Source: Perkinsela sp. CCAP 1560/9
Lineage: Eukaryota > Protista > Euglenozoa: Kinetoplastea
Length of the DNA: 64,000 bases
Reading direction: 5' to 3'
Assembly: GCA_965644495.1 (NCBI GenBank)
Contig: CBFFSA010000042.1
Span: 12,757 to 76,756 of the forward strand
Below the pieces are notes generated by a model. The model made no database searches, was not told the DNA's origin, and saw nothing but the letters and a program-made list of their open reading frames with translations. Below are positions 3,167 to 46,021 of the stretch, one piece after another. The translations under genes and the position numbers were made by a program. Each line of letters opens with the position of its first letter. Position 1 is the stretch's first letter.

Positions 3167-3177
3167 GTGCTACGAGG

Positions 3178-4750: not shown

Positions 4751-4753
4751 TTC

Positions 4754-6154: not shown

Positions 6155-6468
6155 TCTTAAACAAAAACTTAAAGCAAAGTAAAATAACAACCTAACAAGG
6201 ATATATAAGATAATAGTAAATACCCATCCCATGTAAAATTCTGAATACAAATCATAATTCGAAGAAACTATGTGCCCCGAAGGGCCAGCAGGCAAATACA
6301 TAACAGCCCCTCGGCTAAATTTCAAAACGTGGACTATTACTCGTGTGGTATATCTTCCAAAAACTTGCTAAAAATAACCTCGGAGCTCACAGTATCTGTA
6401 GTTTTGACGTGGCCTTCTGGGTACCAAGCGCCAAAGCGGTAGTGACAAAAAAACAAAAAAAAGTATAC

Positions 6469-13041: not shown

Positions 13042-13092
13042 AAAAGAGCTGGGCCCCGAGAGAATACTGCGTAAAAAAATTTCAACAAGGTA

Positions 13093-13130
13093 CAACAAGG
13101 TACAGAAACTGTATCTTTATCGTTAAAGTT
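13093..13130 (-). other. Spliced-leader (mini-exon)-like sequence at the 5' end of A1, followed by a 10-nt relict (13083-13092)
   Basis: AACTTTAACGATAAAGATACAGTTTCTGTACCTTGTTG resembles the kinetoplastid SL exon (AACTAACG...GATACAGTTTCTGTACTATATTG). Confidence 0.85.
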
Positions 13131-17990: not shown

Positions 17991-18347
17991 TTTACTCCAA
18001 GTTTTTCCAACGGAGGAGGCTGAGCTATGTTGGGAATGTTCTTCTGAAACCAATCGCATTTCTGGAAATTAATTCGGAGGTTCATCTCTGCGGCGATCTC
18101 ACGCAGGTAAAAGAAAGCTGCCTCCAATGCTTGCACGTTTTTGGAGCTCAAAGTCACATCGTCTTGGTATGCTCGGATCTTCACGTCAGGATAGAGGTGC
18201 ATGAGTTCTCGTAGCGGGCCTTGCAAAAGTGCGCAGAAGTACATTGATGAAAGTGCCGATCCTTGGCGAATTCCTGAAGAGCTTTCGATGGTAGCAAACA
18301 GAGCATTGTGCGCAAAAAATAGCAGCTCAGAGGGAATCCCATATTCT

Positions 18348-21300: not shown

Positions 21301-22580
21301 GGTGGTAGATCATTCTGCAAGGGATTTTCGTGTGGGTCTGGATGCTTCTCCAAGAGCTTTTCGAGGGTATCTGCATTGTCTGGCGCCATGGGGGCTGCGG
21401 TTAGGGCTGCCATTCCCCTGGAAAATTCCCCCTGGCGGGCCAAGAGTTCGGCTCGAATTGCCGCTCTGTCTGCATCGATTTCGGAGTCGCGTGATCTGGA
21501 GCGCTTTTTATAATGATCCCTCTGGGCATCTTCCCATAGCAAGAGGTACTCCCCCGCTAGCCACAGTTTCATGCGGTTTTCGACGTACGTAGAGTATGAT
21601 GTGTGGCCTTTGCGACCGCCTCGGAAAGGTGCTGGTAGGACACACTTAGGGAGCATTGCGAGAAGTGTCCATGCCTCTACCGTGTTTTCCTTCACTGCGG
21701 ATGTCAAGGATTGCGTGAGGATGCTCGCCCAGAGGAATCTGCAACAGTGTGGAACGTCTTTGCAGGTACTCATGGGAAGTGCGCAGATGGAGCCGAGTGA
21801 TGGCAAATTGTCTGTTGGATTTTCTTCTGCGTTTTGGGGACGTGCCGTTGGTGGGGCTAATGACCGTCCGGAATTGTTGCGGCCCCTGCAGTTTTTGGGG
21901 TGAGACTTGAGCTTGTTCTTGGCGTAGTGTCTGCCACAATCTCTGCAGAGGAATCTTCCCTCTCCCTCCCACCACTCGTTTGGAATGTTTTTGCCGTGTC
22001 GATGAGCTACATGGTGATAAAATGCCTGCCATTTTCCGCTATGTGGTGGGGTTTTCCACGTACATCCTTCTGCTGGGCATTGACGTTCTACATCCTTCTG
22101 CTGCGTATTGGCGTTGTGGTATGTGGTAGGGGCAGAATCAGTATTCTTGCGCTTTGTAGCCTTAGTTGGAGAGAAAATGTGGGCGGATGAGGCCTCCGAA
22201 GTAATTCCCACGTTGTTTGCCACGACAAGGGAGTGATTTGTCTCTTCGTCCGCGGTCATTCTGCCTGTGTCCGGTGTAGGTTCCTCTGCCGCGATCTTGT
22301 AGGCTCTTTCGGTCCAGTGTTTAGGTACGTTTTCGGGGATAGGTGTCGTATACAAAAGTTCATTGTAGGTGCTTTGGCCGGAAATCAGGTGAGCGTTTCC
22401 TGCGAATTGGTCCCAATCTCCGGGTTTGTGTGACATTTGTTCCTGGCGAAAAGAGTCATCATCCATTGGTAACGCGTTGGCATCAAAGGAATCATCGGGC
22501 GGCATGGTGCGACCCTAGTAAGCAATAAAGAGAAAGAAAAATTAATTCAACAAGGTACAGAAACTGTATCTTTATCGTTA

Positions 22581-22584
<4 letters not shown>
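18351..22584 (-). mobile_element. CRE-clade element family B, copy 1, full length (SL 22548-22583)
   Basis: A33 tail, 3' UTR, intact ORF, SL exon at the 5' end. Confidence 0.95.
18915..22505 (-). CDS. Family B RT-REL polyprotein, 1196 aa
   Basis: LsmAD-like N-terminus; zinc fingers CPAEGC..H..H and CRDC..H...C; RT KVDLRNAFN/GVQQGDPLGP/WYLDDG; CCHC CTANGC..HALLC; REL RHN, RPAD..LDFAV, VESFG. Confidence 0.95.
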   Translation of the reverse strand: MPPDDSFDANALPMDDDSFRQEQMSHKPGDWDQFAGNAHLISGQSTYNELLYTTPIPENVPKHWTERAYKIAAEEPTPDTGRMTADEETNHSLVVANNVGITSEASSAHIFSPTKATKRKNTDSAPTTYHNANTQQKDVERQCPAEGCTWKTPPHSGKWQAFYHHVAHRHGKNIPNEWWEGEGRFLCRDCGRHYAKNKLKSHPKNCRGRNNSGRSLAPPTARPQNAEENPTDNLPSLGSICALPMSTCKDVPHCCRFLWASILTQSLTSAVKENTVEAWTLLAMLPKCVLPAPFRGGRKGHTSYSTYVENRMKLWLAGEYLLLWEDAQRDHYKKRSRSRDSEIDADRAAIRAELLARQGEFSRGMAALTAAPMAPDNADTLEKLLEKHPDPHENPLQNDLPPIEGNPLHLEETEVKKAIVSFRRGSSAGTMGLRPEHLQAAILEHVDKDVNPLSALTRLVNHMLQGKAPQDVQSFYAGARLCALEKGEDDVRPIAAGETLRRLVSKAACISIKEKAGTLFNGRQYGVAAPAGAERVIHLCRRAMLNNLGSDNFVFCKVDLRNAFNNVSRPVLTLTTRLNFPELSPWVEWCYSNVSCLTYRDNVIPSAEGVQQGDPLGPLLFSLVLSSVTEEISSRSNLDTQLWYLDDGVLIGEAEEVRKALDVFSNVGSRCGLFLNPSKCEIITPPASSHLTGLFPEIPKTKTRTDGNFDILGSPIGSAEHCVEFLRSEAIEPARETLDAIGFIGDPQVAMSLIRQCTGFCQMVYALRTTPPHALSELCNSLDENVLKAAEWALFLLDSHARDQIQRKKRNGGFGLRSSLLHATAAYVSSVAHAADADDWDPSEAEGFTISVQDVNRKAGVELVDPGTGRIPKQNKPHPESSQRHNLTSRSKRPRHILNNMDADKTAEPEMVIPRQQQLSQAISQQEFTTAYGQADPRTRARWVSQSGKGAGSWAFVTPSRSKGFAFTPTEFRTLSRWWFGMDIYGQDRPCTANGCSLPLQKNGEHALLCKNGHGLITRHNALCVEFASFCSKANMAPQREKSLGNRGPGGGLTRPADVFLPTYTLGKGMVLDFAVTHAQQTKYLDSVRNASWVAAGSFAEHYSETKEKQRQEAEEAQLGFTAMVVESFGSWSKSAMAVLWKVGALRANSSKGLLTDAQARNDLLKELNVTLMRSQARMMVSRIVVSDPQAPLEGE

Positions 22585-26100: not shown

Positions 26101-27619
26101 TCGGATTCGTCCAGTTTTAAAGCTTCTTCTTCCAGGGGAGGTAGGGGGCACGAGATGGGATTACCATGGGGGCTAGGGTGTTTTTCCTGCAGCTTTAGCA
26201 GGGTTTCCTCGCTGTATGGTGCAAGTGGAGCTGCAGTAAGGGCAGCCATGCCTCGGGAAAATTCTCCTTGGCGAACCAGAATTTCAGCCCGTATTGCAGC
26301 CTTGTCTTCTTCACCCTCAATCTCATTATTCGGCACTTTTGAGCGCTTCCTGTCATGCTCCGAATTTGCTTGGGCCCATAGGGTGGTATATTGGCCTTGT
26401 ATCCAAAGTTCCATTCGCTTTGAGATGTAGGAGGTATAGGACTTGTGAGCTTTGCGGCCTCCTCGGTACGGGGCTGGTAGGACGCATTTCGGAAGCAAGG
26501 CAAGAAGGGTCCAGGCTCTCAGTGAGTTTTCGTTTACCGCGGTGGAGAGGGCTGCGGTAAAAATTCTGGTCCACAGATATCGACATCGGTGTGGGACATC
26601 CTTGCACGTGCTTATTTGAGTCGTGCAAACTTCCTCTAGGGACGGTAGACTATGCGTACCTTGTATATCGTACATGGCTTCCCCGGACTCTGACAGCTGT
26701 GAAGGCTGCTGTGGTTGTGAGGGCGGCTGCGAGGAGGGTGGTGTAGATTGCATTTTACAATGATTCAAATGAGAAGTTTTCTTGCTAATATCGTAATGAC
26801 GACCGCATGCGTCGCAGAGAAATCGTCCTTCCTTTGTCCACCAGTCATTGGGTATGTTATTTCCGTGTCGGTAAGCAACGTGGTTGTAGTACGACTGCCA
26901 TTGACCTCCATGGGCACGAGTTTTCCAAATACAGTTTTCTGCGGGGCACTCCCTTTGTGTCGGACGGTTTTGGGAAGATGGAAACGTGAGAACTGCTTCG
27001 CTCGTCGAAGGTGGGATTTCAAGGGAAGTTCCTTGTACTATTTGGCGTGGAGAGTTGTTTTCGGGGTTATGTTCCGTCGCTTCCCCTTTTCGAGGTGTAG
27101 CTGGTTCGCGCGCTTTTCGATGAGACTTTACGATTCCCCGATTCCCTTTGACGCTTGGGGGTGTGGAAGATGGTTGGCATCGAGTAAACTTTTTAGTGAT
27201 AGTGTTGCTATCAGATTGCGTTTTTTGGTGTCCATGATGTAATCTGATGACTCGTGAGTGGTTTGTTTCCTCATCGCTACTATCTACCTGTCCCGTATCA
27301 TGTGTCTGGTTCTCAGTTGAGATCAAGGCGGCGTTCATGTTCCATTCTTCCGGAATGTTCGCAGGAATAGGGGTCGTGTAGAGCAATTCGTTGTACGTAC
27401 TCCGTTGCTTAATGAGATGTGCGTTTCCAGCAAACTGGTCCCAGGATCCTCTATTGTGTACTGCTTCCTCTTGTAAAAATGAATCGTCGTCCATCGGCGG
27501 AGGTGAGGCTTTGAGAAGATCGTTTTCAGACATGAGAAAGAACCGCGTACCTGGAAAAGATGAAATAAAGAAAATAATTCAACAAGGTACAGAAACTGTA
27601 TCTTTATCGTTAAAGAGTC
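23174..27619 (-). mobile_element. CRE-clade element family C, copy 1, full length (SL 27580-27615), frameshifted
   Basis: A20 tail and SL at the 5' end; near-identical to 31895-36313. Confidence 0.93.
23738..27533 (-). pseudogene. Family C polyprotein with a 5-nt deletion near 24190, just before the REL PD motif
   Basis: GAGAGCCAGAACCCC here versus GAGAGCCCCCCCAGGACCCC in copy 2; span 3796 versus 3801 nt. Confidence 0.9.
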
Positions 27620-30700: not shown

Positions 30701-31894
30701 GGGGGCTGCGGTTAGGGCTGCCATTCCCCTGGAAAATTCCCCCTGGCGGGCCAAGAGTTCGGCTCGAATTGCCGCTCTGTCTGCATCGATTTCGGAGTCG
30801 CGTGATCTGGAGCGCTTTTTATAATGATCCCTCTGGGCATCTTCCCATAGCAAGAGGTACTCCCCCGCTAGCCACAGTTTCATGCGGTTTTCGACGTACG
30901 TAGAGTATGATGTGTGGCCTTTGCGACCGCCTCGGAAAGGTGCTGGTAGGACACACTTAGGGAGCATTGCGAGAAGTGTCCATGCCTCTACCGTGTTTTC
31001 CTTCACTGCGGATGTCAAGGATTGCGTGAGGATGCTCGCCCAGAGGAATCTGCAACAGTGTGGAACGTCTTTGCAGGTACTCATGGGAAGTGCGCAGATG
31101 GAGCCGAGTGATGGCAAATTGTCTGTTGGATTTTCTTCTGCGTTTTGGGGACGTGCCGTTGGTGGGGCTAATGACCGTCCGGAATTGTTGCGGCCCCTGC
31201 AGTTTTTGGGGTGAGACTTGAGCTTGTTCTTGGCGTAGTGTCTGCCACAATCTCTGCAGAGGAATCTTCCCTCTCCCTCCCACCACTCGTTTGGAATGTT
31301 TTTGCCGTGTCGATGAGCTACATGGTGATAAAATGCCTGCCATTTTCCGCTATGTGGTGGGGTTTTCCACGTACATCCTTCTGCTGGGCATTGACGTTCT
31401 ACATCCTTCTGCTGCGTATTGGCGTTGTGGTATGTGGTAGGGGCAGAATCAGTATTCTTGCGCTTTGTAGCCTTAGTTGGAGAGAAAATGTGGGCGGATG
31501 AGGCCTCCGAAGTAATTCCCACGTTGTTTGCCACGACAAGGGAGTGATTTGTCTCTTCGTCCGCGGTCATTCTGCCTGTGTCCGGTGTAGGTTCCTCTGC
31601 CGCGATCTTGTAGGCTCTTTCGGTCCAGTGTTTAGGTACGTTTTCGGGGATAGGTGTCGTATACAAAAGTTCATTGTAGGTGCTTTGGCCGGAAATCAGG
31701 TGAGCGTTTCCTGCGAATTGGTCCCAATCTCCGGGTTTGTGTGACATTTGTTCCTGGCGAAAAGAGTCATCATCCATTGGTAACGCGTTGGCATCAAAGG
31801 AATCATCGGGCGGCATGGTGCGACCCTAGTAAGCAATAAAGAGAAAGAAAAATTAATTCAACAAGGTACAGAAACTGTATCTTTATCGTTAAAG
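27756..31894 (-). mobile_element. Family B copy 2, full length (SL 31859-31894), alternative poly(A) site
   Basis: Poly(T) joins directly at the G-run, about 80 nt inside the end seen in B1. Confidence 0.95.
28226..31816 (-). CDS. Family B RT-REL polyprotein, 1196 aa
   Basis: As B1, with 2 aa differences visible (H/Q, L/P). Confidence 0.95.
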   Translation of the reverse strand: MPPDDSFDANALPMDDDSFRQEQMSHKPGDWDQFAGNAHLISGQSTYNELLYTTPIPENVPKHWTERAYKIAAEEPTPDTGRMTADEETNHSLVVANNVGITSEASSAHIFSPTKATKRKNTDSAPTTYHNANTQQKDVERQCPAEGCTWKTPPHSGKWQAFYHHVAHRHGKNIPNEWWEGEGRFLCRDCGRHYAKNKLKSHPKNCRGRNNSGRSLAPPTARPQNAEENPTDNLPSLGSICALPMSTCKDVPHCCRFLWASILTQSLTSAVKENTVEAWTLLAMLPKCVLPAPFRGGRKGHTSYSTYVENRMKLWLAGEYLLLWEDAQRDHYKKRSRSRDSEIDADRAAIRAELLARQGEFSRGMAALTAAPMAPDNADTLEKLLEKHPDPHENPLQNDLPPIEGNPLHLEETEVKKAIVSFRRGSSAGTMGLRPEHLQAAILEHVDKDVNPLSALTRLVNHMLQGKAPQDVQSFYAGARLCALEKGEDDVRPIAAGETLRRLVSKAACISIKEKAGTLFNGRQYGVAAPAGAERVIHLCRRAMLNNLGSDNFVFCKVDLRNAFNNVSRPVLTLTTRLNFPELSPWVEWCYSNVSCLTYRDNVIPSAEGVQQGDPLGPLLFSLVLSSVTEEISSRSNLDTQLWYLDDGVLIGEAEEVRKALDVFSNVGSRCGLFLNPSKCEIITPPASSHLTGLFPEIPKTKTRTDGNFDILGSPIGSAEHCVEFLRSEAIEPARETLDAIGFIGDPQVAMSLIRQCTGFCQMVYALRTTPPQALSELCNSLDENVLKAAEWALFPLDSHARDQIQRKKRNGGFGLRSSLLHATAAYVSSVAHAADADDWDPSEAEGFTISVQDVNRKAGVELVDPGTGRIPKQNKPHPESSQRHNLTSRSKRPRHILNNMDADKTAEPEMVIPRQQQLSQAISQQEFTTAYGQADPRTRARWVSQSGKGAGSWAFVTPSRSKGFAFTPTEFRTLSRWWFGMDIYGQDRPCTANGCSLPLQKNGEHALLCKNGHGLITRHNALCVEFASFCSKANMAPQREKSLGNRGPGGGLTRPADVFLPTYTLGKGMVLDFAVTHAQQTKYLDSVRNASWVAAGSFAEHYSETKEKQRQEAEEAQLGFTAMVVESFGSWSKSAMAVLWKVGALRANSSKGLLTDAQARNDLLKELNVTLMRSQARMMVSRIVVSDPQAPLEGE

Positions 31895-34800
31895 TTTTTT
31901 TTTTTTTTTTTTTTTTTTGGCATTGCCTCTATATTTTGACCCAGTAGACGAACCAAGTACATAGTAGGTCCATTAGGGGGGTATATGAATTTAAAACAAG
32001 CAATCAAATTAGCAATTCTTTTTATTTCCACAGAAGTATATTTTCTTTTTCTTTTTTCTCAGCCCAAAACTAGCAATTTAATCTCCCCTAAGTATATACG
32101 ACAAACAAGACACAGTAAAAATAAAAACAAGCAATCCAGACCCAATCCATTCGCGCGTTCCGGACCGGGTCTTTCGACCACTCCACGGCCTGACTTGTGA
32201 ACCCTTCCCTTGTTATGTGGGAGGGCGCAGGCGCGGGCCTGTGTCGACAGCGACACGGTCGCGAAACAGGATGCTGGCCGACGGGGAGGAGATTCACTAC
32301 CCGTGTACTACCTCACTTGGGGTACCTAGCCCTCGCGGGCTAGGCGTGAGCATAGTCTCTGTCGACCCGGCCAGCACCCGTCCTGGATATTATGGCGTCT
32401 TCGTGCTGAAACTGGACTGTCAGTAGAGGCTTAAGCCTCTACCAAAGGATCCGCTGGGTCCTCTACGCGGATGCGCGAAACCATCATCCTGGCTTGAGAA
32501 CGCATTAGCGTTACGTTCAGATCTGTTAGGAGATCGTTTCGCGCTTGGTCTCGTGAAAGGAGCCCTTTGGATGCATTCGCCCGTTGGGTTCCGATGTCCC
32601 GGAGTAACGCTAGCGCACTCTCGCTCCAGGAACCAAAGGATTCCACCACCATCGCTGTGAAGAGATGTCCTGCTTTTTCTGCTTCTTGTCGCTGTCGCGC
32701 CTTGGTCTCCGCGAAGTGCTCGGCAAAAGACCCCGGGGTCACCCAGCTAGCATTGTGGACTGAGTCCAAATACTTTGTTTGCTGTGCGTGAGTGACCGCA
32801 AAATCTAGGACCATGCCTTGCGCTAAAGATCCTTTGGCGATGGAGGCAGTTGGCAGAAATACGTCTGCTGGTCTCGTGAGAGCCCCCCCAGGACCCCGAT
32901 TTCCCAAACTCTTCTCTCTCTGTGGCGCCAGGAAGGCTCTGCTGCAGAACGATGTAAATTGTTGGGCCAGAGCGTTGTGCCGTGAGATGATACCATGGCC
33001 GTTCTTGCAGAGCAAAGCGTGCTCTCCATTCTTGAGCAAGGGAAGGGTGCACCCGTCAGCTGGGCAAGGCCGATCTTCGGGGAAGACGTCCATGCCTAGC
33101 CACCAGCGTGTTAGGGTACGAAACTCCGTGTGGGTGAAAGCGTAGCCTCTGGTCTTGGAGGGAGTTGCGAAAGCCCAGTTTCCGGCCCCTTTTCCGGACT
33201 GCGAGATCCATCGCGCCCGCGTTCTTGCGTCTGCCTTTGAATATGCCGTTTGAAATTCCCTATCCGAGATAGCTTGGCTGAGATGTTTTTGCCTCGGGAT
33301 GATCTTTTCCTGATCCGTCGAGACCGGGAGAAGGGCGTGATTGAGGGATTGTGCGAGTTTTCTTTTCGCTGGGCGGGAAAGGATGCTCCGATTTGCATGA
33401 TATTCACCAGGCACACTAGGTTTGGTAATGCGTCCAGTGTATGGATCAACCAGATCAGTCCCAACTTTGTCATTTATGTCATGTGCTGAGCTGGAAAATC
33501 CCTCAGCTTCTGTGGGGTCCCAGTTGTCCAAGCTAGCGGCGTGCGCGACGGAAGAAACGTAGGCTGCTGACTGGTGGAGAATTGATGAGCGAAGTCCGAA
33601 CCCGCCGTGGCGTTTTGGTCGTTGTATTTGGTCGCTAGCGGCGACGCCTAAGGGAGAAATTGCGTGCTCCACGGCCTGGACTAGATGAGAGTCAAGTTTT
33701 TGGCATAATTCTCCAAGGGCTTGGGGAGGAGTGGTGCGCAGTGCGTACACCATCTGACAAAACCCCGAACATTGCCGTATTAGTGCGAGAGCTATTTGGG
33801 GATCTTCTAACACAGCAGTAGCTTCTAATGTTTCGCGGGCTGGTTCAATCGCGTGTGTCATGAGAAACTCCGCACAGTGTTCCGCAGAGCCTATTGGGCT
33901 TCCAAGAATGTCGAAGTTCCCGTCGTACCGTATTTTATCACTGGGGATGTCAGGAAAGAAAACGGAGGTATGAGCTGATGCTGGGGGGGTAATGATCTCG
34001 CACTTGGAGAGATTCAGGAAGAGTCCCCACTTCGGTCCTATCTCGTCGAGGACGTCTAGGGCTTTACGGACTTCTTTGGGCTCACCTACAAGCACACCGT
34101 CATCTAAATACCATAATTGTGTTCGTAGGTTAGAATTTGATGCAATTTCTTCTGTTACCTCTGCTAACACCAAGGAGAAGAGGAGTGGGCCCAGAGGGTC
34201 TCCTTGTTGCACTCCTTCTGCCGAGGGGATAAAATCATTGCCGAATGTGAGACAGCTGTGATTGGCATAACACCATTCTACCCATGGGGATAGTTCAGGG
34301 AAATGCTTTCGTGTGAGGAAGATGAAGACGGGTCGGCTCACGTTATTAAAGGCGTTCCGAAGATCCACCTTACAGAACGTTATGTTCTCATTTTCTTCAT
34401 TATTTCTCATTAGACGGCGACAAAGGTGTATCACTCTTTCCGCCCCAGCAGACGCTGCGACCCCGTATTGACGACGTCCAAAGAAGGATCCTGCTTTTTC
34501 TTTTATCGAAAGGCACACTGCCTTGCTCACCAGGCGTCTAAGGGTTTCCCCCGCAGCGATAGGCCGCACGTCATCTTCCCCTTTTTCGAGTGCGCATAGC
34601 CGTGCCCCTGCAAAAAAAGGTTGCACTTCGTCTGGGGCTTTGCCAGCTAGGAGATGGTTTACGAAGGAAGTGAGCGTCGTAAGAGGATTCATATTCTGGT
34701 CGACGTGCTCTTGAAGCGCTGTTTGGAGGTGTTCAGGCCGGAGCCCCATAGTCCCAGCAGAGGATCCGCGACGGAAGGTATCTACTGCTTTTCTCACCTC

Positions 34801-36313
34801 GGATTCGTCCAGTTTTAAAGCTTCTTCTTCCAGGGGAGGTAGGGGGCACGAGATGGGATTACCATGGGGGCTAGGGTGTTTTTCCTGCAGCTTTAGCAGG
34901 GTTTCCTCGCTGTATGGTGCAAGTGGAGCTGCAGTAAGGGCAGCCATGCCTCGGGAAAATTCTCCTTGGCGAACCAGAATTTCAGCCCGTATTGCAGCCT
35001 TGTCTTCTTCACCCTCAATCTCATTATTCGGCACTTTTGAGCGCTTCCTGTCATGCTCCGAATTTGCTTGGGCCCATAGGGTGGTATATTGGCCTTGTAT
35101 CCAAAGTTCCATTCTCTTTGAGATGTAGGAGGTATAGGACTTGTGAGCTTTGCGGCCTCCTCGGTACGGGGCTGGTAGGACGCATTTCGGAAGCAAGGCA
35201 AGAAGGGTCCAGGCTCTCAGTGAGTTTTCGTTTACCGCGGTGGAGAGGGCTGCGGTAAAAATTCTGGTCCACAGATATCGACATCGGTGTGGGACATCCT
35301 TGCACGTGCTTATTTGAGTCGTGCAAACTTCCTCTAGGGACGGTAGACTATGCGTACCTTGTATATCGTACATGGCTTCCCCGGACTCTGACAGCTGTGA
35401 AGGCTGCTGTGGTTGTGAGGGCGGCTGCGAGGAGGGTGGTGTAGATTGCATTTTACAATGATTCAAATGAGAAGTTTTCTTGCTAATATCGTAATGACGA
35501 CCGCATGCGTCGCAGAGAAATCGTCCTTCCTTTGTCCACCAGTCATTGGGTATGTTATTTCCGTGTCGGTAAGCAACGTGGTTGTAGTACGACTGCCATT
35601 GACCTCCATGGGCACGAGTTTTCCAAATACAGTTTTCTGCGGGGCACTCCCTTTGTGTCGGACGGTTTTGGGAAGATGGAAACGTGAGAACTGCTTCGCT
35701 CGTCGAAGGTGGGATTTCAAGGGAAGTTCCTTGTACTATTTGGCGTGGAGAGTTGTTTTCGGGGTTATGTTCCGTCGCTTCCCCCTTTCGAGGTGTAGCT
35801 GGTTCGCGCGCTTTTCGATGAGACTTTACGATTCCCCGATTCCCTTTGACGCTTGGGGGTGTGGAAGATGGTTGGCATCGAGTAAACTTTTTAGTGATAG
35901 TGTTGCTATCAGATTGCGTTTTTTGGTGTCCATGATGTAATCTGATGACTCGTGAGTGGTTTGTTTCCTCATCGCTACTATCTACCTGTCCCGTATCACG
36001 TGTCTGGTTCTCAGTTGAGATCAAGGCGGCGTTCATGTTCCATTCTTCCGGAATGTTCGCAGGAATAGGGGTCGTGTAGAGCAATTCGTTGTACGTACTC
36101 CGTTGCTTAATGAGATGTGCGTTTCCAGCAAACTGGTCCCAGGATCCTCTATTGTGTACTGCTTCCTCTTGTAAAAATGAATCGTCGTCCATCGGCGGAG
36201 GTGAGGCTTTGAGAAGATCGTTTTCAGACATGAGAAAGAACCGCGTACCTGGAAAAGATGAAATAAAGAAAATAATTCAACAAGGTACAGAAACTGTATC
36301 TTTATCGTTAAAG
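31895..36313 (-). mobile_element. Family C copy 2, full length and intact (SL 36278-36313)
   Basis: A24 tail, intact ORF, SL. Confidence 0.95.
32431..36231 (-). CDS. Family C RT-REL polyprotein, 1266 aa
   Basis: Same domain set as family B (WDQFAGN..STYNELLYTT, zinc fingers, WYLDDG, RHN, RPAD, LDFAV). Confidence 0.95.
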   Translation of the reverse strand: MSENDLLKASPPPMDDDSFLQEEAVHNRGSWDQFAGNAHLIKQRSTYNELLYTTPIPANIPEEWNMNAALISTENQTRDTGQVDSSDEETNHSRVIRLHHGHQKTQSDSNTITKKFTRCQPSSTPPSVKGNRGIVKSHRKAREPATPRKGEATEHNPENNSPRQIVQGTSLEIPPSTSEAVLTFPSSQNRPTQRECPAENCIWKTRAHGGQWQSYYNHVAYRHGNNIPNDWWTKEGRFLCDACGRHYDISKKTSHLNHCKMQSTPPSSQPPSQPQQPSQLSESGEAMYDIQGTHSLPSLEEVCTTQISTCKDVPHRCRYLWTRIFTAALSTAVNENSLRAWTLLALLPKCVLPAPYRGGRKAHKSYTSYISKRMELWIQGQYTTLWAQANSEHDRKRSKVPNNEIEGEEDKAAIRAEILVRQGEFSRGMAALTAAPLAPYSEETLLKLQEKHPSPHGNPISCPLPPLEEEALKLDESEVRKAVDTFRRGSSAGTMGLRPEHLQTALQEHVDQNMNPLTTLTSFVNHLLAGKAPDEVQPFFAGARLCALEKGEDDVRPIAAGETLRRLVSKAVCLSIKEKAGSFFGRRQYGVAASAGAERVIHLCRRLMRNNEENENITFCKVDLRNAFNNVSRPVFIFLTRKHFPELSPWVEWCYANHSCLTFGNDFIPSAEGVQQGDPLGPLLFSLVLAEVTEEIASNSNLRTQLWYLDDGVLVGEPKEVRKALDVLDEIGPKWGLFLNLSKCEIITPPASAHTSVFFPDIPSDKIRYDGNFDILGSPIGSAEHCAEFLMTHAIEPARETLEATAVLEDPQIALALIRQCSGFCQMVYALRTTPPQALGELCQKLDSHLVQAVEHAISPLGVAASDQIQRPKRHGGFGLRSSILHQSAAYVSSVAHAASLDNWDPTEAEGFSSSAHDINDKVGTDLVDPYTGRITKPSVPGEYHANRSILSRPAKRKLAQSLNHALLPVSTDQEKIIPRQKHLSQAISDREFQTAYSKADARTRARWISQSGKGAGNWAFATPSKTRGYAFTHTEFRTLTRWWLGMDVFPEDRPCPADGCTLPLLKNGEHALLCKNGHGIISRHNALAQQFTSFCSRAFLAPQREKSLGNRGPGGALTRPADVFLPTASIAKGSLAQGMVLDFAVTHAQQTKYLDSVHNASWVTPGSFAEHFAETKARQRQEAEKAGHLFTAMVVESFGSWSESALALLRDIGTQRANASKGLLSRDQARNDLLTDLNVTLMRSQARMMVSRIRVEDPADPLVEA

Positions 36314-36700
36314 TTTTTTTTTTTTTTTTTTTTTTTTTTTTGACGAACCAAGTACATAGTAGGTCCATTAGGGGGGTATATGAATTTAAAACAAGCAATC
36401 AAATTAGCAATTCTTTTTATTTCCACAGAAGTATATTTTCTTTTTCTTTTTTCTCAGCCCAAAACTAGCAATTTAATCTCCCCTAAGTATATACGACAAA
36501 CAAGACACAGTAAAAATAAAAACAAGCAATCCAGACCCAATCCATTCGCGCGTTCCGGACCGGGTCTTTCGACCACTCCACGGCCTGACTTGTGAACCCT
36601 TCCCTTGTTATGTGGGAGGGCGCAGGCGCGGGCCTGTGTCGACAGCGACACGGTCGCGAAACAGGATGCTGGCCGACGGGGAGGAGATTCACTACCCGTG
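36314..36700 (-). mobile_element. Family C 3'-UTR fragment with poly(A)
   Basis: Matches about 31947-32305; different poly(A) site; truncated within the RNA motif. Confidence 0.85.
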
Positions 36701-39700: not shown

Positions 39701-40907
39701 TGCATTGTCTGGCGCCATGGGGGCTGCGGTTAGGGCTGCCATTCCCCTGGAAAATTCCCCCTGGCGGGCCAAGAGTTCGGCTCGAATTGCCGCTCTGTCT
39801 GCATCGATTTCGGAGTCGCGTGATCTGGAGCGCTTTTTATAATGATCCCTCTGGGCATCTTCCCATAGCAAGAGGTACTCCCCCGCTAGCCACAGTTTCA
39901 TGCGGTTTTCGACGTACGTAGAGTATGATGTGTGGCCTTTGCGACCGCCTCGGAAAGGTGCTGGTAGGACACACTTAGGGAGCATTGCGAGAAGTGTCCA
40001 TGCCTCTACCGTGTTTTCCTTCACTGCGGATGTCAAGGATTGCGTGAGGATGCTCGCCCAGAGGAATCTGCAACAGTGTGGAACGTCTTTGCAGGTACTC
40101 ATGGGAAGTGCGCAGATGGAGCCGAGTGATGGCAAATTGTCTGTTGGATTTTCTTCTGCGTTTTGGGGACGTGCCGTTGGTGGGGCTAATGACCGTCCGG
40201 AATTGTTGCGGCCCCTGCAGTTTTTGGGGTGAGACTTGAGCTTGTTCTTGGCGTAGTGTCTGCCACAATCTCTGCAGAGGAATCTTCCCTCTCCCTCCCA
40301 CCACTCGTTTGGAATGTTTTTGCCGTGTCGATGAGCTACATGGTGATAAAATGCCTGCCATTTTCCGCTATGTGGTGGGGTTTTCCACGTACATCCTTCT
40401 GCTGGGCATTGACGTTCTACATCCTTCTGCTGCGTATTGGCGTTGTGGTATGTGGTAGGGGCAGAATCAGTATTCTTGCGCTTTGTAGCCTTAGTTGGAG
40501 AGAAAATGTGGGCGGATGAGGCCTCCGAAGTAATTCCCACGTTGTTTGCCACGACAAGGGAGTGATTTGTCTCTTCGTCCGCGGTCATTCTGCCTGTGTC
40601 CGGTGTAGGTTCCTCTGCCGCGATCTTGTAGGCTCTTTCGGTCCAGTGTTTAGGTACGTTTTCGGGGATAGGTGTCGTATACAAAAGTTCATTGTAGGTG
40701 CTTTGGCCGGAAATCAGGTGAGCGTTTCCTGCGAATTGGTCCCAATCTCCGGGTTTGTGTGACATTTGTTCCTGGCGAAAAGAGTCATCATCCATTGGTA
40801 ACGCGTTGGCATCAAAGGAATCATCGGGCGGCATGGTGCGACCCTAGTAAGCAATAAAGAGAAAGAAAAATTAATTCAACAAGGTACAGAAACTGTATCT
40901 TTATCGT

Positions 40908-40911
<4 letters not shown>
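36701..40911 (-). mobile_element. Family B copy 3, full length (SL 40877-40909)
   Basis: A23 tail, intact ORF, SL with a variant 5' end. Confidence 0.95.
37244..40834 (-). CDS. Family B RT-REL polyprotein, 1196 aa
   Basis: Same protein as B2. Confidence 0.95.
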   Translation of the reverse strand: MPPDDSFDANALPMDDDSFRQEQMSHKPGDWDQFAGNAHLISGQSTYNELLYTTPIPENVPKHWTERAYKIAAEEPTPDTGRMTADEETNHSLVVANNVGITSEASSAHIFSPTKATKRKNTDSAPTTYHNANTQQKDVERQCPAEGCTWKTPPHSGKWQAFYHHVAHRHGKNIPNEWWEGEGRFLCRDCGRHYAKNKLKSHPKNCRGRNNSGRSLAPPTARPQNAEENPTDNLPSLGSICALPMSTCKDVPHCCRFLWASILTQSLTSAVKENTVEAWTLLAMLPKCVLPAPFRGGRKGHTSYSTYVENRMKLWLAGEYLLLWEDAQRDHYKKRSRSRDSEIDADRAAIRAELLARQGEFSRGMAALTAAPMAPDNADTLEKLLEKHPDPHENPLQNDLPPIEGNPLHLEETEVKKAIVSFRRGSSAGTMGLRPEHLQAAILEHVDKDVNPLSALTRLVNHMLQGKAPQDVQSFYAGARLCALEKGEDDVRPIAAGETLRRLVSKAACISIKEKAGTLFNGRQYGVAAPAGAERVIHLCRRAMLNNLGSDNFVFCKVDLRNAFNNVSRPVLTLTTRLNFPELSPWVEWCYSNVSCLTYRDNVIPSAEGVQQGDPLGPLLFSLVLSSVTEEISSRSNLDTQLWYLDDGVLIGEAEEVRKALDVFSNVGSRCGLFLNPSKCEIITPPASSHLTGLFPEIPKTKTRTDGNFDILGSPIGSAEHCVEFLRSEAIEPARETLDAIGFIGDPQVAMSLIRQCTGFCQMVYALRTTPPQALSELCNSLDENVLKAAEWALFPLDSHARDQIQRKKRNGGFGLRSSLLHATAAYVSSVAHAADADDWDPSEAEGFTISVQDVNRKAGVELVDPGTGRIPKQNKPHPESSQRHNLTSRSKRPRHILNNMDADKTAEPEMVIPRQQQLSQAISQQEFTTAYGQADPRTRARWVSQSGKGAGSWAFVTPSRSKGFAFTPTEFRTLSRWWFGMDIYGQDRPCTANGCSLPLQKNGEHALLCKNGHGLITRHNALCVEFASFCSKANMAPQREKSLGNRGPGGGLTRPADVFLPTYTLGKGMVLDFAVTHAQQTKYLDSVRNASWVAAGSFAEHYSETKEKQRQEAEEAQLGFTAMVVESFGSWSKSAMAVLWKVGALRANSSKGLLTDAQARNDLLKELNVTLMRSQARMMVSRIVVSDPQAPLEGE

Positions 40912-40938
<27 letters not shown>

Positions 40939-41144
40939 GCAATTAATAAGGGGGGAGATGTATGAAACGCGGCATTGCCTCTATATTACCCATTATGCGA
41001 ACCAAGTAGGTCCATTGGGGGGGATATGAATGTATGTAAATTTCTTAGTTTTTCCTCCTTCCACAAGCAATCAGCCCACCCCAAACTAGCAAACAATTTC
41101 CCCCCACGAAGCCGCCTCCCTGAAGAGAAATGCAGTGAAAAGTC
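40912..41144 (-). mobile_element. Unit H: about 206-nt non-coding polyadenylated unit (also 46022-46235, 52908-53138, 60170-60401)
   Basis: Four copies with the same ends (GCAATTAATAAG...GTGAAAAGTC on the + strand) but different neighbours and tail lengths. Confidence 0.8.
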
Positions 41145-41170
41145 TTTTTTTTTTTTTTTTTGCAGCCGTC

Positions 41171-44100
41171 TTTTGCAATTAATAAGGGGGGAGAAGTATG
41201 AATCGCGGCATTGCCTCTATATTTTGACCCAGTAGACGAACCAAGTAGGTCCATTGGGGGGGGGGGTATACGAATTGAAAACAAACAATCAAATTAGCAA
41301 TTCTTTTTCTGTCCACAGATGTACCTTTTTTCTCAGCCCAAAACTAGCAATTTAGTCTCCCCTAAGTATATACTACAAACAAGAAAAACAGTAAAAATTA
41401 AAACAAGCAATCCATGCCCAATCCATTCGCGCGTTCCGGACCGGGTCTTTCGACCACTCCACGGCCTGACTTGTGAACCCTTCCCTTGTTATATGGGAGG
41501 GCGCAGGCGCGGGCCTGTGTCGACAGCGACACGGTCGCGAAACAGGATGCTGGCCGACGGGGAGGAGATTCACTGCCCGTGTACTACCTCACTTGGGGTA
41601 CCTAGCCCTCGCGAGCTAGGCGTGAGTATAGACTCTGTCGACGCGACCAGCACCCTAATCGTCTTGTTACCCTAGAGGACCATGCCTGTGGGCCCTACTC
41701 CCCTTCCAGGGGAGCTTGGGGGTCACTGACGACTATCCGGGAGACCATCATGCGGGCCTGAGAGCGCATGAGTGTGACGTTAAGCTCTTTCAGAAGGTCA
41801 TTTCGGGCTTGAGCATCCGTGAGAAGACCTTTTGACGAGTTGGCGCGCAGTGCTCCCACCTTCCATAAGACCGCCATTGCGCTTTTACTCCACGAGCCAA
41901 AAGACTCGACAACCATGGCCGTGAACCCTAGTTGTGCTTCTTCTGCTTCTTGACGTTGTTTTTCCTTCGTTTCTGAGTAATGCTCGGCGAAAGACCCTGC
42001 AGCCACCCAGCTAGCATTCCGGACAGAGTCCAAATACTTTGTTTGCTGTGCGTGGGTGACTGCGAAGTCTAGTACCATGCCTTTCCCTAGAGTGTACGTG
42101 GGGAGGAAAACGTCAGCCGGTCTGGTGAGACCCCCTCCTGGCCCCCGATTTCCTAGACTTTTTTCTCGCTGGGGAGCCATGTTGGCCTTGCTGCAAAAGG
42201 AGGCGAATTCTACACAAAGCGCATTGTGCCGCGTGATGAGGCCATGTCCGTTCTTGCACAATAATGCATGCTCCCCATTTTTCTGTAGGGGTAGGGAACA
42301 CCCGTTTGCTGTGCAGGGGCGGTCTTGGCCATAAATGTCCATGCCAAACCACCAGCGCGATAACGTGCGGAACTCGGTTGGTGTGAAAGCAAAACCTTTA
42401 CTCCTTGAGGGCGTGACGAAGGCCCAGCTCCCAGCTCCCTTTCCTGACTGTGAAACCCATCGTGCTCGGGTGCGGGGGTCGGCCTGGCCGTAGGCTGTAG
42501 TGAATTCCTGCTGCGATATGGCTTGGCTCAGTTGCTGCTGCCGGGGTATAACCATTTCCGGCTCGGCCGTCTTATCCGCGTCCATGTTGTTGAGTATGTG
42601 TCGTGGGCGTTTGCTTCTCGAGGTGAGGTTGTGTCTTTGGCTGGACTCTGGATGTGGTTTATTCTGTTTCGGGATGCGTCCTGTACCGGGATCCACAAGT
42701 TCTACCCCCGCCTTTCTATTCACGTCCTGCACGGAAATGGTGAATCCCTCGGCTTCTGAAGGGTCCCAATCGTCTGCATCGGCGGCGTGCGCAACGGAGG
42801 AGACATATGCTGCTGTTGCGTGGAGGAGAGAAGACCTGAGACCAAAACCCCCGTTGCGCTTCTTACGTTGGATTTGGTCACGCGCGTGGGAATCCAGAGG
42901 GAAAAGTGCCCATTCCGCGGCTTTTAGAACATTTTCATCAAGGGAATTACAAAGCTCAGAAAGCGCCTGAGGGGGTGTCGTGCGAAGTGCGTAGACCATT
43001 TGACAGAATCCAGTGCACTGCCGGATGAGGGACATGGCTACTTGTGGGTCTCCTATGAAACCTATTGCGTCTAATGTTTCGCGTGCGGGCTCAATGGCTT
43101 CTGACCTGAGAAACTCCACGCAATGCTCCGCTGACCCAATCGGGGAGCCCAAGATGTCGAAATTTCCATCAGTACGAGTTTTAGTCTTCGGTATCTCTGG
43201 AAATAATCCTGTGAGATGGGATGAAGCAGGCGGTGTTATTATCTCACATTTCGATGGGTTTAGGAAAAGTCCGCATCGGGAGCCAACATTGGAAAAAACA
43301 TCGAGCGCCTTCCTGACCTCCTCAGCCTCCCCTATGAGTACCCCGTCATCTAGGTACCAAAGTTGAGTGTCTAGATTCGACCGAGACGATATTTCTTCTG
43401 TTACACTGGATAGTACTAGAGAGAAGAGAAGAGGGCCTAGTGGGTCTCCTTGTTGTACCCCCTCTGCCGAGGGTATGACATTGTCTCTGTAGGTAAGACA
43501 GCTCACGTTGGAGTAACACCACTCTACCCAAGGTGAGAGTTCGGGGAAATTTAAGCGCGTGGTTAGGGTGAGAACAGGCCTGCTGACGTTATTGAAAGCG
43601 TTTCTTAAGTCCACTTTGCAGAAGACAAAATTGTCACTCCCCAGGTTATTGAGCATGGCTCTCCGGCAGAGGTGGATAACTCGTTCGGCTCCCGCGGGGG
43701 CTGCTACACCATATTGTCGCCCGTTGAACAGAGTACCCGCTTTCTCCTTTATCGAGATACATGCCGCCTTGCTTACGAGGCGTCTAAGGGTTTCACCCGC
43801 TGCGATTGGTCGAACATCGTCCTCGCCTTTTTCCAGGGCGCAGAGCCGGGCTCCAGCGTAGAATGATTGGACGTCTTGTGGCGCTTTTCCTTGAAGCATG
43901 TGGTTCACTAGTCGCGTGAGGGCCGAGAGAGGATTCACATCCTTGTCCACATGTTCCAAGATGGCTGCCTGGAGGTGCTCTGGACGAAGGCCCATTGTGC
44001 CGGCTGAAGATCCCCTGCGGAAGCTGACGATCGCTTTTTTGACCTCTGTTTCCTCTAGGTGTAGGGGGTTGCCCTCGATCGGTGGTAGATCATTCTGCAA

Positions 44101-45398
44101 GGGATTTTCGTGTGGGTCTGGATGCTTCTCCAAGAGCTTTTCGAGGGTATCTGCATTGTCTGGCGCCATGGGGGCTGCGGTTAGGGCTGCCATTCCCCTG
44201 GAAAATTCCCCCTGGCGGGCCAAGAGTTCGGCTCGAATTGCCGCTCTGTCTGCATCGATTTCGGAGTCGCGTGATCTGGAGCGCTTTTTATAATGATCCC
44301 TCTGGGCATCTTCCCATAGCAAGAGGTACTCCCCCGCTAGCCACAGTTTCATGCGGTTTTCGACGTACGTAGAGTATGATGTGTGGCCTTTGCGACCGCC
44401 TCGGAAAGGTGCTGGTAGGACACACTTAGGGAGCATTGCGAGAAGTGTCCATGCCTCTACCGTGTTTTCCTTCACTGCGGATGTCAAGGATTGCGTGAGG
44501 ATGCTCGCCCAGAGGAATCTGCAACAGTGTGGAACGTCTTTGCAGGTACTCATGGGAAGTGCGCAGATGGAGCCGAGTGATGGCAAATTGTCTGTTGGAT
44601 TTTCTTCTGCGTTTTGGGGACGTGCCGTTGGTGGGGCTAATGACCGTCCGGAATTGTTGCGGCCCCTGCAGTTTTTGGGGTGAGACTTGAGCTTGTTCTT
44701 GGCGTAGTGTCTGCCACAATCTCTGCAGAGGAATCTTCCCTCTCCCTCCCACCACTCGTTTGGAATGTTTTTGCCGTGTCGATGAGCTACATGGTGATAA
44801 AATGCCTGCCATTTTCCGCTATGTGGTGGGGTTTTCCACGTACATCCTTCTGCTGGGCATTGACGTTCTACATCCTTCTGCTGCGTATTGGCGTTGTGGT
44901 ATGTGGTAGGGGCAGAATCAGTATTCTTGCGCTTTGTAGCCTTAGTTGGAGAGAAAATGTGGGCGGATGAGGCCTCCGAAGTAATTCCCACGTTGTTTGC
45001 CACGACAAGGGAGTGATTTGTCTCTTCGTCCGCGGTCATTCTGCCTGTGTCCGGTGTAGGTTCCTCTGCCGCGATCTTGTAGGCTCTTTCGGTCCAGTGT
45101 TTAGGTACGTTTTCGGGGATAGGTGTCGTATACAAAAGTTCATTGTAGGTGCTTTGGCCGGAAATCAGGTGAGCGTTTCCTGCGAATTGGTCCCAATCTC
45201 CGGGTTTGTGTGACATTTGTTCCTGGCGAAAAGAGTCATCATCCATTGGTAACGCGTTGGCATCAAAGGAATCATCGGGCGGCATGGTGCGACCCTAGTA
45301 AGCAATAAAGAGAAAGAAAAATTAATTCAACAAGGTACAGAAACAACAAGGTACAGAAACTGTATCTTTATCGTTAAGAGAGTTTGCGTGCAGCCGTC
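41171..45398 (-). mobile_element. Family B copy 4, full length, SL (45344-45376) plus 16-nt SL relict (45328-45343)
   Basis: Intact ORF. The 5' end reads SL + TTTCTGTACCTTGTTG + element body. Confidence 0.95.
41695..45285 (-). CDS. Family B RT-REL polyprotein, 1196 aa
   Basis: Same protein as B2/B3. Confidence 0.95.
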   Translation of the reverse strand: MPPDDSFDANALPMDDDSFRQEQMSHKPGDWDQFAGNAHLISGQSTYNELLYTTPIPENVPKHWTERAYKIAAEEPTPDTGRMTADEETNHSLVVANNVGITSEASSAHIFSPTKATKRKNTDSAPTTYHNANTQQKDVERQCPAEGCTWKTPPHSGKWQAFYHHVAHRHGKNIPNEWWEGEGRFLCRDCGRHYAKNKLKSHPKNCRGRNNSGRSLAPPTARPQNAEENPTDNLPSLGSICALPMSTCKDVPHCCRFLWASILTQSLTSAVKENTVEAWTLLAMLPKCVLPAPFRGGRKGHTSYSTYVENRMKLWLAGEYLLLWEDAQRDHYKKRSRSRDSEIDADRAAIRAELLARQGEFSRGMAALTAAPMAPDNADTLEKLLEKHPDPHENPLQNDLPPIEGNPLHLEETEVKKAIVSFRRGSSAGTMGLRPEHLQAAILEHVDKDVNPLSALTRLVNHMLQGKAPQDVQSFYAGARLCALEKGEDDVRPIAAGETLRRLVSKAACISIKEKAGTLFNGRQYGVAAPAGAERVIHLCRRAMLNNLGSDNFVFCKVDLRNAFNNVSRPVLTLTTRLNFPELSPWVEWCYSNVSCLTYRDNVIPSAEGVQQGDPLGPLLFSLVLSSVTEEISSRSNLDTQLWYLDDGVLIGEAEEVRKALDVFSNVGSRCGLFLNPSKCEIITPPASSHLTGLFPEIPKTKTRTDGNFDILGSPIGSAEHCVEFLRSEAIEPARETLDAIGFIGDPQVAMSLIRQCTGFCQMVYALRTTPPQALSELCNSLDENVLKAAEWALFPLDSHARDQIQRKKRNGGFGLRSSLLHATAAYVSSVAHAADADDWDPSEAEGFTISVQDVNRKAGVELVDPGTGRIPKQNKPHPESSQRHNLTSRSKRPRHILNNMDADKTAEPEMVIPRQQQLSQAISQQEFTTAYGQADPRTRARWVSQSGKGAGSWAFVTPSRSKGFAFTPTEFRTLSRWWFGMDIYGQDRPCTANGCSLPLQKNGEHALLCKNGHGLITRHNALCVEFASFCSKANMAPQREKSLGNRGPGGGLTRPADVFLPTYTLGKGMVLDFAVTHAQQTKYLDSVRNASWVAAGSFAEHYSETKEKQRQEAEEAQLGFTAMVVESFGSWSKSAMAVLWKVGALRANSSKGLLTDAQARNDLLKELNVTLMRSQARMMVSRIVVSDPQAPLEGE

Positions 45399-46021
45399 TT
45401 TTTTTTTTTTTTTTTTATTTCCACAGAAGTATATTTTCTTTTTCTTTTTTCTAAGCCCAAAACTAGCAATTCAATCTCCCCTAAGTATATACGACAAACA
45501 AGAAACAGTAAAAATAAAAACAAGCAATCCAGGCCCAATCCATTCGCGCGTTCCGGACCGGGTCTTTCGACCTCTCCACGGCCTGACTTGTGAACCCTTC
45601 CCTTGCTATACGGGAGGGCGCAGGCGCGGGCCTGTGTCGACAGCGACACGGTCGCGAAACAGGATGCTGGCCGACGGGGAGGAGATTCACTACCCGTGTA
45701 CTACCTCACTTGGGGTACCTAGCCCTCGCGGGCTAGGCGTGAGACTTCACCCGCTTCTTTCCCTCACTTCCCCCCCCCCCGAGCATCCATCCGCGCCTTC
45801 CAAACTTTGCCCTCCTCTTTCCCTCACTTCCCCCCAGAAATCAATCCGCGCGTGCTCCACCCCTTCTTCCAGCAGTGCGCGCTTCGGACCGGGTCTCTCG
45901 ACCTCTCCACGGCCTGGCTTGGGAACCCTTCCCTTGTTATGCGGGAGGGCGCAGGCGCGGGCATGTGCCGACAGCGGCACGGTCACGAAGTTGGGTTTTG
46001 ATCGCCGGATTCGGATGAATG
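45399..46021 (-). mobile_element. Chimeric 3'-UTR fragment: C/B-type (45399-45743) fused to D-type (45743-46021)
   Basis: Switch at GGCGTGAG/ACTTCACCCGC with no intervening poly(T). Confidence 0.8.

What the first reader, a model, noticed from the sequence alone, without database searches (positions are those of the whole stretch)
45328..45376. SL relict: new SL joined at the AG inside the old, DNA-encoded SL (cDNA recycling)
Seen: B4 reads SL + TTTCTGTACCTTGTTG, exactly the part of the SL downstream of its internal ACAG. A1/A2 read SL + TACCTTGTTG, the part downstream of an internal TG. Known: tandem relict SLs mark repeated retro-recycling in dinoflagellate genes. Inference: array copies are transcribed, re-trans-spliced within their own SL and reinserted. 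Splicing at the SL's terminal TG would regenerate single-SL copies exactly, so the 5' end would not erode.
Basis: partly seen in the sequence, partly recalled or inferred. Interest (0 to 1): 0.8.

Follow-up and report, generated by a model that had tools for sequence, protein, structure and literature searches.

The report
Recycled spliced leader on protist retrotransposon
A young jumping gene in a kinetoplastid-type protist begins, in the DNA, with the cell's mRNA leader followed by a shortened second leader, most likely the record of a copy that already carried a leader being transcribed, given a new leader at an AG inside the old one, and copied back into the genome.

Summary
Confirmed. On the minus strand, element B4 starts with spliced-leader (SL) nt 5-38 plus an exact 16-nt relict that begins after the SL's internal CAG; reads span the junction. 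The host is kinetoplastid-like and B4 is an intact CRE-like retrotransposon. The SL is part of the copied RNA, not a target duplication.

The 16-nt AG relict is best explained by re-trans-splicing (~0.75). The left SL ends at the splice donor in 24/24 and 9/13 tandem cases. In other organisms' metagenomes the same AG relict occurs seven times, three before distant RT lineages, one with a further 22-nt AG relict, and no TG relict occurs.

The TG part is weaker. Here 10-nt TG relicts dominate (26 copies versus 9 AG), but 7- and 8-nt relicts follow AC/TA, stuttered ends exist, and no parent locus or usable RNA data were found. Regeneration of single-SL heads by splicing at the terminal UG is plausible but unproven (~0.45).

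This works like dinoflagellate cDNA recycling, but on retrotransposons. The scan noted SL-headed elements and relicts before on other pieces of this genome; the cross-species evidence comes from my own tests. New variant of a known kind; interest 0.55.

The parts
45344..45377 (-). New (outer) SL exon copy, nt 5-38, at the head of element B4
   Evidence: identical to the SL RNA gene exon
45328..45343 (-). 16-nt SL relict (nt 23-38), starting after the SL's internal CAG
   Evidence: junction in reads
45286..45327 (-). Family-B 5' UTR; pyrimidine-rich, with an AG at 45296-45295 that is not the SL junction in any of 11 DNA copies
41695..45285 (-). Intact 1196-aa ORF: N-terminal Cys/His motifs, RT (RVT_1), C-terminal CCHC and restriction-like endonuclease PD..D motif
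41145..41694 (-). B4 3' UTR, A4, a 10-nt piece also found upstream of the SL, and an A17 run; no SL follows
45378..45398 (-). 19-nt fragment of another repeat plus 2 extra nt between the upstream poly(A) and the SL; its first 10 nt recur at the B4 3' end (possible but not clean target duplication)
45399..45416 (-). Poly(A) tail of the upstream 5'-truncated element
13083..13130 (-). A1 head: SL nt 1-38 plus 10-nt relict (after TG)
17945..17992 (-). A2 head: same as A1, part of the same tandem duplication
22548..22583 (-). B1 single-SL head (nt 3-38, preceded by T)
27580..27615 (-). C1 single-SL head (nt 3-38, preceded by T)
31859..31896 (-). B2 single-SL head (nt 1-38; the first two A may come from the upstream poly(A))
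36278..36315 (-). C2 single-SL head
40877..40909 (-). B3 single-SL head (nt 6-38)

Best explanation
B4 records two rounds of RNA-to-DNA copying. (1, shown) Full-length elements of many families begin in DNA with the host's current SL, and the SL is part of the copied RNA. (2, inferred from trypanosomatid polycistronic transcription) An SL-headed family-B copy was transcribed by read-through. (3, inferred, well supported) The spliceosome used the CAG at nt 20-22 of the DNA-encoded SL as acceptor and joined a fresh SL there, giving SL + 16-nt relict + UTR. (4, from established non-LTR biology) The element's RT/endonuclease copied this RNA by target-primed reverse transcription next to a poly(A) tail in the array, stopping near the cap. 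The 22-nt relicts are the same event at the SL's other AG. The 10-nt relicts are probably use of a UG acceptor (~0.55). Single-SL heads are probably renewed in register at the terminal UG (~0.45), against homologous RT or DNA exchange (~0.3), direct transcription of the DNA SL (~0.15) or unassembled AG-preceded masters (~0.1).
For: SL is not a target duplication: 5'-truncated copies stacked after poly(A) carry no SL (about 16 such fragments in L189), and the B4 3' end is not followed by SL. All 11 intact family-B heads have an SL, 10 single and only B4 double, and B4 is 1 SNP from B1-B3 over 1.4 kb, so the relict is recent and derived. A single-SL family-A head exists in a second assembly (L190). 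The left SL ends exactly at nt 38 in 24/24 and 9/13 cases, never at the nearer TG at nt 34-35 in that search. Both AGs give relicts here (7 x 16 nt, 2 x 22 nt) and the CG does not. Other organisms: 7 metagenome contigs with SL + 16-nt AG relict, at least 3 SL variants, 5 with upstream DNA flank, 3 followed by RT ORFs only 21-29% alike, one with SL+16+22; no TG relict (8 of 8 G-preceded starts are AG, P=0.004). Triple heads here (16+10; 10+10) fit successive rounds. A T replaces SL nt 2 in most heads across unrelated families (rough P=7e-4), as expected if RT runs off at a modified cap. 45 of 61 heads match SL nt 9-38 exactly, most of the rest are 5'-truncated, and there are 38 different UTR starts.
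Against: No RNA evidence: the only probable RNA run holds none of the element. In this genome TG relicts (26) outnumber AG relicts (9), the reverse of T. brucei acceptor use (94% AG at major sites, TG 2% of minor sites; PMC2916883). Relicts also start after AC (7 nt, 5 copies) and TA (8 nt, 3 copies), and 10 junctions have spacers. For two spacer cases no parent locus was found. Stuttered partial SL repeats that splicing cannot make exist (L046, L055, L056, L068, L013, L050; three more). The internal AG has no upstream pyrimidine tract, while the tract-AG 31 nt into the B UTR is never a junction in DNA (0/11).
Confidence: 0.72

Rival explanations
1. RT slippage or template jump during one insertion. 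The RT copies into the SL, slips or jumps using a G/TG microhomology to an SL 3' end (same RNA, another mRNA or a free SL exon), and copies the SL again. No second splicing round is needed.
For: Every common relict start has 1-2 nt of microhomology to the SL end, and the commonest (10 nt) has the longest of those tested. Stutters and partial 5'-SL duplications occur at heads. Spacers of 1-9 nt lack parents and resemble non-templated additions. 16 of 26 ten-nt relicts have a 5'-truncated left SL, near a hairpin over nt 18-30. R2-type RT template jumping is known (own knowledge).
Against: It predicts left ends at nt 35 as well (0/24) and TG over AG starts, yet other organisms show 8 AG and 0 TG. 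The same AG relict sits on distant RT lineages, which points to host machinery. About 0.15 for B4, about 0.4 for the 10-nt class.
Confidence: 0.17
2. DNA-level unequal exchange or tandem duplication between SL heads after insertion.
For: Arrays recombine: A1/A2 and the 7.26-kb block are tandem duplicates. The same module + A-run + GC + SL nt 6 junction precedes family B here (B3) and another family in L190, which implies exchange within the SL/UTR start.
Against: It gives no reason for break points at the splice donor on one side and after AG on the other, in several species.
Confidence: 0.06
3. SL-targeted insertion as in CRE1/SLACS/CZAR: the outer SL is target DNA (a duplication) and the relict is the element's own truncated end.
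For: The elements are CRE-like, and trypanosomatid CRE elements insert in SL RNA genes with target duplications (PMC12278014).
Against: Poly(A) tails are usually not followed by SL; truncated copies have no SL; upstream flanks are unrelated to the SL gene and vary.
Confidence: 0.03
4. Assembly artefact.
For: The SL is a 500-copy repeat; library concatemers of SLs exist in one metagenome study.
Against: The junction is present in contigs of two read sets at depth above 150.
Confidence: 0.02

Closest known systems
Dinoflagellate recycling of processed cDNAs with tandem relict SLs (Slamovits and Keeling 2008, as cited in PMC6050394; PMC5585692)
   Same: Tandem SLs in DNA as a count of retroposition rounds; the SL's internal AG proposed as acceptor for the next SL (PMC5585692).
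   Different: Here the carriers examined are retrotransposons and repeats, not host genes; the host is a euglenozoan; relicts are exact and young; many start after TG; most copies have a single, near-complete SL.
Trypanosomatid CRE clade (CRE1, CRE2, SLACS, CZAR)
   Same: Single ORF with zinc-finger-like motifs, RT and restriction-like endonuclease, poly(A) tail (PMC12278014); SL sequence directly at the 5' end.
   Different: Those insert at a fixed site in SL RNA genes. These are dispersed or stacked on poly(A) tails and carry the SL as part of their RNA. No named trypanosomatid CRE was among the 120 best protein hits; the named hits were sponge proteins at 36-40%.
R2-type RLE retrotransposons
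   Same: Best solved-structure matches are R2 proteins (E 4e-6 to 1e-4); 5'-truncated copies and variable 5' junctions.
   Different: R2 makes its 5' end with a ribozyme from an rRNA co-transcript (PMC3414825 abstract); here the 5' end is the host SL.

Membership tests
Kinetoplastid-type SL RNA system | SL exon followed by a GT intron in SL RNA genes, with a stem-loop across the donor site | tested here: met
   L002/L003 tandem genes; fold z=-5.6 with three stem-loops
Kinetoplastid-type SL RNA system | SL joined to host mRNAs at AG acceptors in this organism | not testable with these tools
   No raw RNA reads available
CRE-clade RLE non-LTR retrotransposon | Single ORF with non-LTR RT | tested here: met
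   1196 aa, RVT_1 E=1.5e-17; R2 best PDB hits
CRE-clade RLE non-LTR retrotransposon | C-terminal CCHC and PD..D endonuclease motif; N-terminal zinc-finger-like motifs; poly(A) tail | tested here: met
   Motif scan only; tails
CRE-clade RLE non-LTR retrotransposon | RT phylogeny groups with named CRE elements | not tested
   No named CRE sequence was returned by the tools; 'CRE-like' rests on architecture and my recollection of motifs
SL-specific CRE1/SLACS/CZAR | Insertion at a fixed position in SL RNA genes | tested here: not met
   Flanks vary; no SL or SL intron after tails; truncated copies lack SL
SL-specific CRE1/SLACS/CZAR | Target-site duplication | tested here: inconclusive
   B4 has a 10-nt repeat at both ends, but it is part of a 19-nt piece of another repeat; none found in L189-L192
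Dinoflagellate-type SL recycling | Tandem SL in DNA with a shorter inner relict | tested here: met
   46 matches genome-wide
Dinoflagellate-type SL recycling | Relict begins after the SL's internal AG | tested here: inconclusive
   Met for B4, 9 copies here and 8 of 9 junctions elsewhere; not met for 26 TG and 8 AC/TA copies
Dinoflagellate-type SL recycling | Carriers are host protein-coding retrogenes | tested here: inconclusive
   Carriers I could assign are RT elements or repeated families; many downstream ORFs were unassigned
Dinoflagellate-type SL recycling | Double SL seen on transcripts | not testable with these tools
   No RNA run holds the element

The most novel reading that the evidence does not exclude
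These retrotransposons renew their 5' end every cycle because the spliceosome joins a fresh capped SL in register onto the SL copy in their pre-mRNA, at its terminal UG, without an AG. The incoming SL RNA's intron could guide this by pairing with nt 20-31 of the old SL (duplex -9.2 kcal/mol, the normal stem-loop I pairing formed in trans). Relicts would be the mis-registered products, and the strategy would be shared by several RT lineages across kinetoplastids.
Probability: 0.4. Interest if true: 0.75.

Novelty: new variant of a known kind. Interest (0 to 1): 0.55.

Why it matters
Non-LTR elements need a way to regain a defined 5' end and expression signals after each insertion; known answers are internal promoters, ribozymes and insertion into a fixed host gene. 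These elements appear to use the host's trans-splicing, and the relicts are a DNA record of which acceptors were used. If UG acceptors, including the terminal one, are real, this is a natural case of efficient non-AG trans-splicing that one SL-anchored RNA experiment can test. It would also suggest re-reading the SL at the 5' junction of CRE1/SLACS/CZAR as possibly RNA-borne. My literature searches (open-access library only) found no description of SL relict recycling in Euglenozoa.

Tried and rejected
- Dinoflagellate SL in the window: no match. Rfam: no hit.
- SL as target duplication: rejected.
- The 10-nt repeat at both ends of B4 as a clean TSD: downgraded, it is part of a 19-nt piece of another repeat.
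- AG-preceded master copy of family B: none among 11.
- Parent loci for two spacer junctions: none in the assembly.
- Conserved pairing between the SL 5' half and the element UTR: seen in family B (P about 0.02) but not across families, rejected.
- 77 metagenome hits from one study series (Ga00739xx) were excluded as SL concatemer or assembly artefacts: a few fixed non-AG junctions at contig ends on many different mRNAs, one contig with four or more SLs. L126 was excluded as an AT-rich chance match.
- Species name: not obtained.
- One search used 27 ten-nt copies; the recount is 26. Event counts are rough and conservative.
One search was over a pattern size limit and was resent shorter.
- The big protein search was not used. 

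Full report
Observation. On the minus strand, 45377-45344 is nt 5-38 of a 38-nt spliced leader and 45343-45328 repeats nt 23-38 exactly; the family-B 5' UTR and a 1196-aa ORF follow. The SL was defined from two tandem SL RNA genes on contig C1, where the same exon is followed by a GT intron and folds into three stem-loops; nt 1 is inferred, not mapped. SL nt 20-22 are CAG, so the relict starts after an AG. A1 and A2 carry the full SL plus nt 29-38, starting after TG, but they lie in one tandem duplication and are the only family-A heads in the assembly, so they count once. Short contigs from two read sets span the SL/relict junction.

Context. The window is a head-to-tail array of poly(A)-tailed non-LTR elements with RT, zinc-finger-like motifs and a restriction-like endonuclease motif. 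The 21-Mb genome has 521 matches to SL nt 16-38, mostly at the heads of retroelements and repeats, with a few retrocopies of unspliced SL RNA. The SL and intron are of kinetoplastid type (own knowledge); the species was not identified.

The SL belongs to the copied RNA. Trypanosomatid CRE elements insert into SL genes (PMC12278014), so I tested whether the SL is a target duplication. It is not: 5'-truncated copies follow poly(A) with no SL, here and in a stack of about 16 fragments in a second assembly of the same or a very close organism (L189); flanks of dispersed copies are unrelated to the SL gene. Heads mostly start at SL nt 3-7, and a T stands in place of nt 2 in most of them across unrelated families (16 T, 6 A, 2 C, 1 G before removing duplicates; rough P=7e-4). 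I read this as RT running off at a modified cap (inference). Forty-five of 61 heads match SL nt 9-38 exactly, most others are simply truncated, and they sit on 38 different UTR starts. Two relatives from other organisms, 35-38% identical to B, start with their own host's SL (L097, L187). The SL is therefore either renewed each cycle or strongly constrained.

B4 is a derived double. All 11 intact family-B heads have an SL; ten are single, none is preceded by an AG instead, and none is joined at the pyrimidine tract and AG 31 nt into the UTR. B4 is one SNP from B1-B3 over 1.4 kb and differs from all three at two sites over its length, so its parent need not be a neighbour. A single-SL family-A head exists in the second assembly (L190), so the A relict is also an addition.

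Census. Of 46 tandem matches, 26 are 10-nt (after TG), 7 are 16-nt and 2 are 22-nt (after the two AGs), 1 is 17-nt, and 10 have 1-9 extra nt between the copies. Five 7-nt relicts (after AC) and three 8-nt relicts (after TA) add to this. No relict starts after the CG. Among abutting relicts, 35 of 44 use 3 of 26 positions (copies, not events; at least 19 distinct flanks among the 10-nt sites read). The left copy ends exactly at the donor, nt 38, in 24 of 24 cases where it could have ended from nt 32 on, never at the nearer TG, and in 9 of 13 for the longer class. Triple heads (SL+16+10, SL+10+10) exist. There are also stuttered heads and partial 5'-SL duplications that splicing cannot make, so RT irregularities are a second source. 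Parents for two spacer junctions were not found.

Other organisms. A scan of metagenomes with the canonical kinetoplastid SL end gave 86 hits. Seventy-seven from one study series were set aside as concatemer artefacts and one as chance. Of the other eight, seven are SL plus the 16-nt AG relict, with at least three SL variants; five have upstream DNA flank; three precede RT ORFs only 21-29% alike; one has a further 22-nt AG relict; the eighth is a 9-nt relict. None is a TG relict, although that TG is present and offers the longer microhomology. This is the strongest argument that the AG relict is made by the host spliceosome rather than by one RT.

Mechanism. Shown: SL-headed copies, the SL in the copied RNA, donor-exact left ends, AG-exact starts for B4's class in several organisms. 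Inferred: read-through transcription of an SL-headed copy, trans-splicing at the internal CAG, and re-insertion (about 0.75 for B4). The 10-nt class may be UG-acceptor splicing (about 0.55) or RT slippage (about 0.4); T. brucei uses AG at 94% of major sites and TG at 2% of minor sites (PMC2916883), so this organism would need unusual tolerance. How single heads are renewed is open. Splicing at the terminal UG (about 0.45) could be guided by the SL intron pairing with nt 20-31 of the old SL (speculative). Homologous exchange is a real alternative (about 0.3): the same upstream junction precedes two different families in the two assemblies. Direct transcription (0.15) and missing masters (0.1) remain.

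Comparison. It works like dinoflagellate cDNA recycling, where tandem SLs count retroposition rounds and the internal AG is the proposed acceptor (PMC5585692, PMC6050394), but on retrotransposons of a euglenozoan. The elements have CRE-type architecture but fail the SL-gene insertion test, so I do not file them with CRE1/SLACS/CZAR; clade membership by tree was not tested. Earlier scan notes on other pieces of this genome describe SL-headed elements and relicts. One judged AG recycling unsupported; my donor-end and cross-species tests support it for the 16- and 22-nt class only.

Limits.

Noticed in passing
window 16104-17960 and 41695-45285 (N-termini); L097, L185, L187, L121: Host-like domains on these RT proteins: weak LsmAD match in families A and B (E 7e-5, 0.007, below cut-off); MLLE, ubiquitin and UCH domains in relatives from other organisms. 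LsmAD and MLLE both belong to poly(A)-binding pathways, and these elements stack on poly(A) tails.
   Followed up: partly
window 40877-41161 and L190:2890-3245: The same short module + A-run + GC + SL nt 6 junction precedes family B here and a different family in the second assembly, suggesting exchange inside the SL/UTR start.
   Followed up: no
L075-L078, L033: Dispersed retrocopies of unspliced SL RNA, ending in A-rich tails about 70 nt into the intron (L033 shorter); they suggest where the SL RNA ends.
   Followed up: partly
L001, L004, L005, L007, L018, L022, L024-L026: A dispersed non-coding family headed by SL nt 8-20 onward followed by GTAC; roughly 100 SL+GT sites genome-wide; one copy (L048) has the 16-nt relict.
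   Followed up: partly
window 45378-45398 and 41161-41174: A 19-nt piece of another repeat (also in L015, L065, L188) sits before B4's SL, and its first 10 nt recur at B4's 3' end; unexplained.
   Followed up: partly
L189:239-4307: About 16 successive 5'-truncated 3'-end fragments, each ending in poly(A), stacked head to tail, reminiscent of telomeric retrotransposon arrays.
   Followed up: no
window 1493-6975: ORFs of a different element; only a weak RT_RNaseH match (E 0.003); possibly a DIRS/VIPER-type retroelement.
   Followed up: no
G000:C1:661.3k-661.6k: Only two SL RNA genes with the full exon and their own upstream sequence were seen (pattern misses some); the main SL gene array may be collapsed in the assembly.
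   Followed up: no
G000:C11:518304-518333: An SL-headed sequence with one copy in the assembly has depth above 1000 in the probable RNA run X5; unexplained.
   Followed up: partly
window 50578-52869; L191:4922-9805: Some CRE-like ORFs carry or adjoin an RNase H match, unusual for this architecture; may be a fusion with a nested insert.
   Followed up: no
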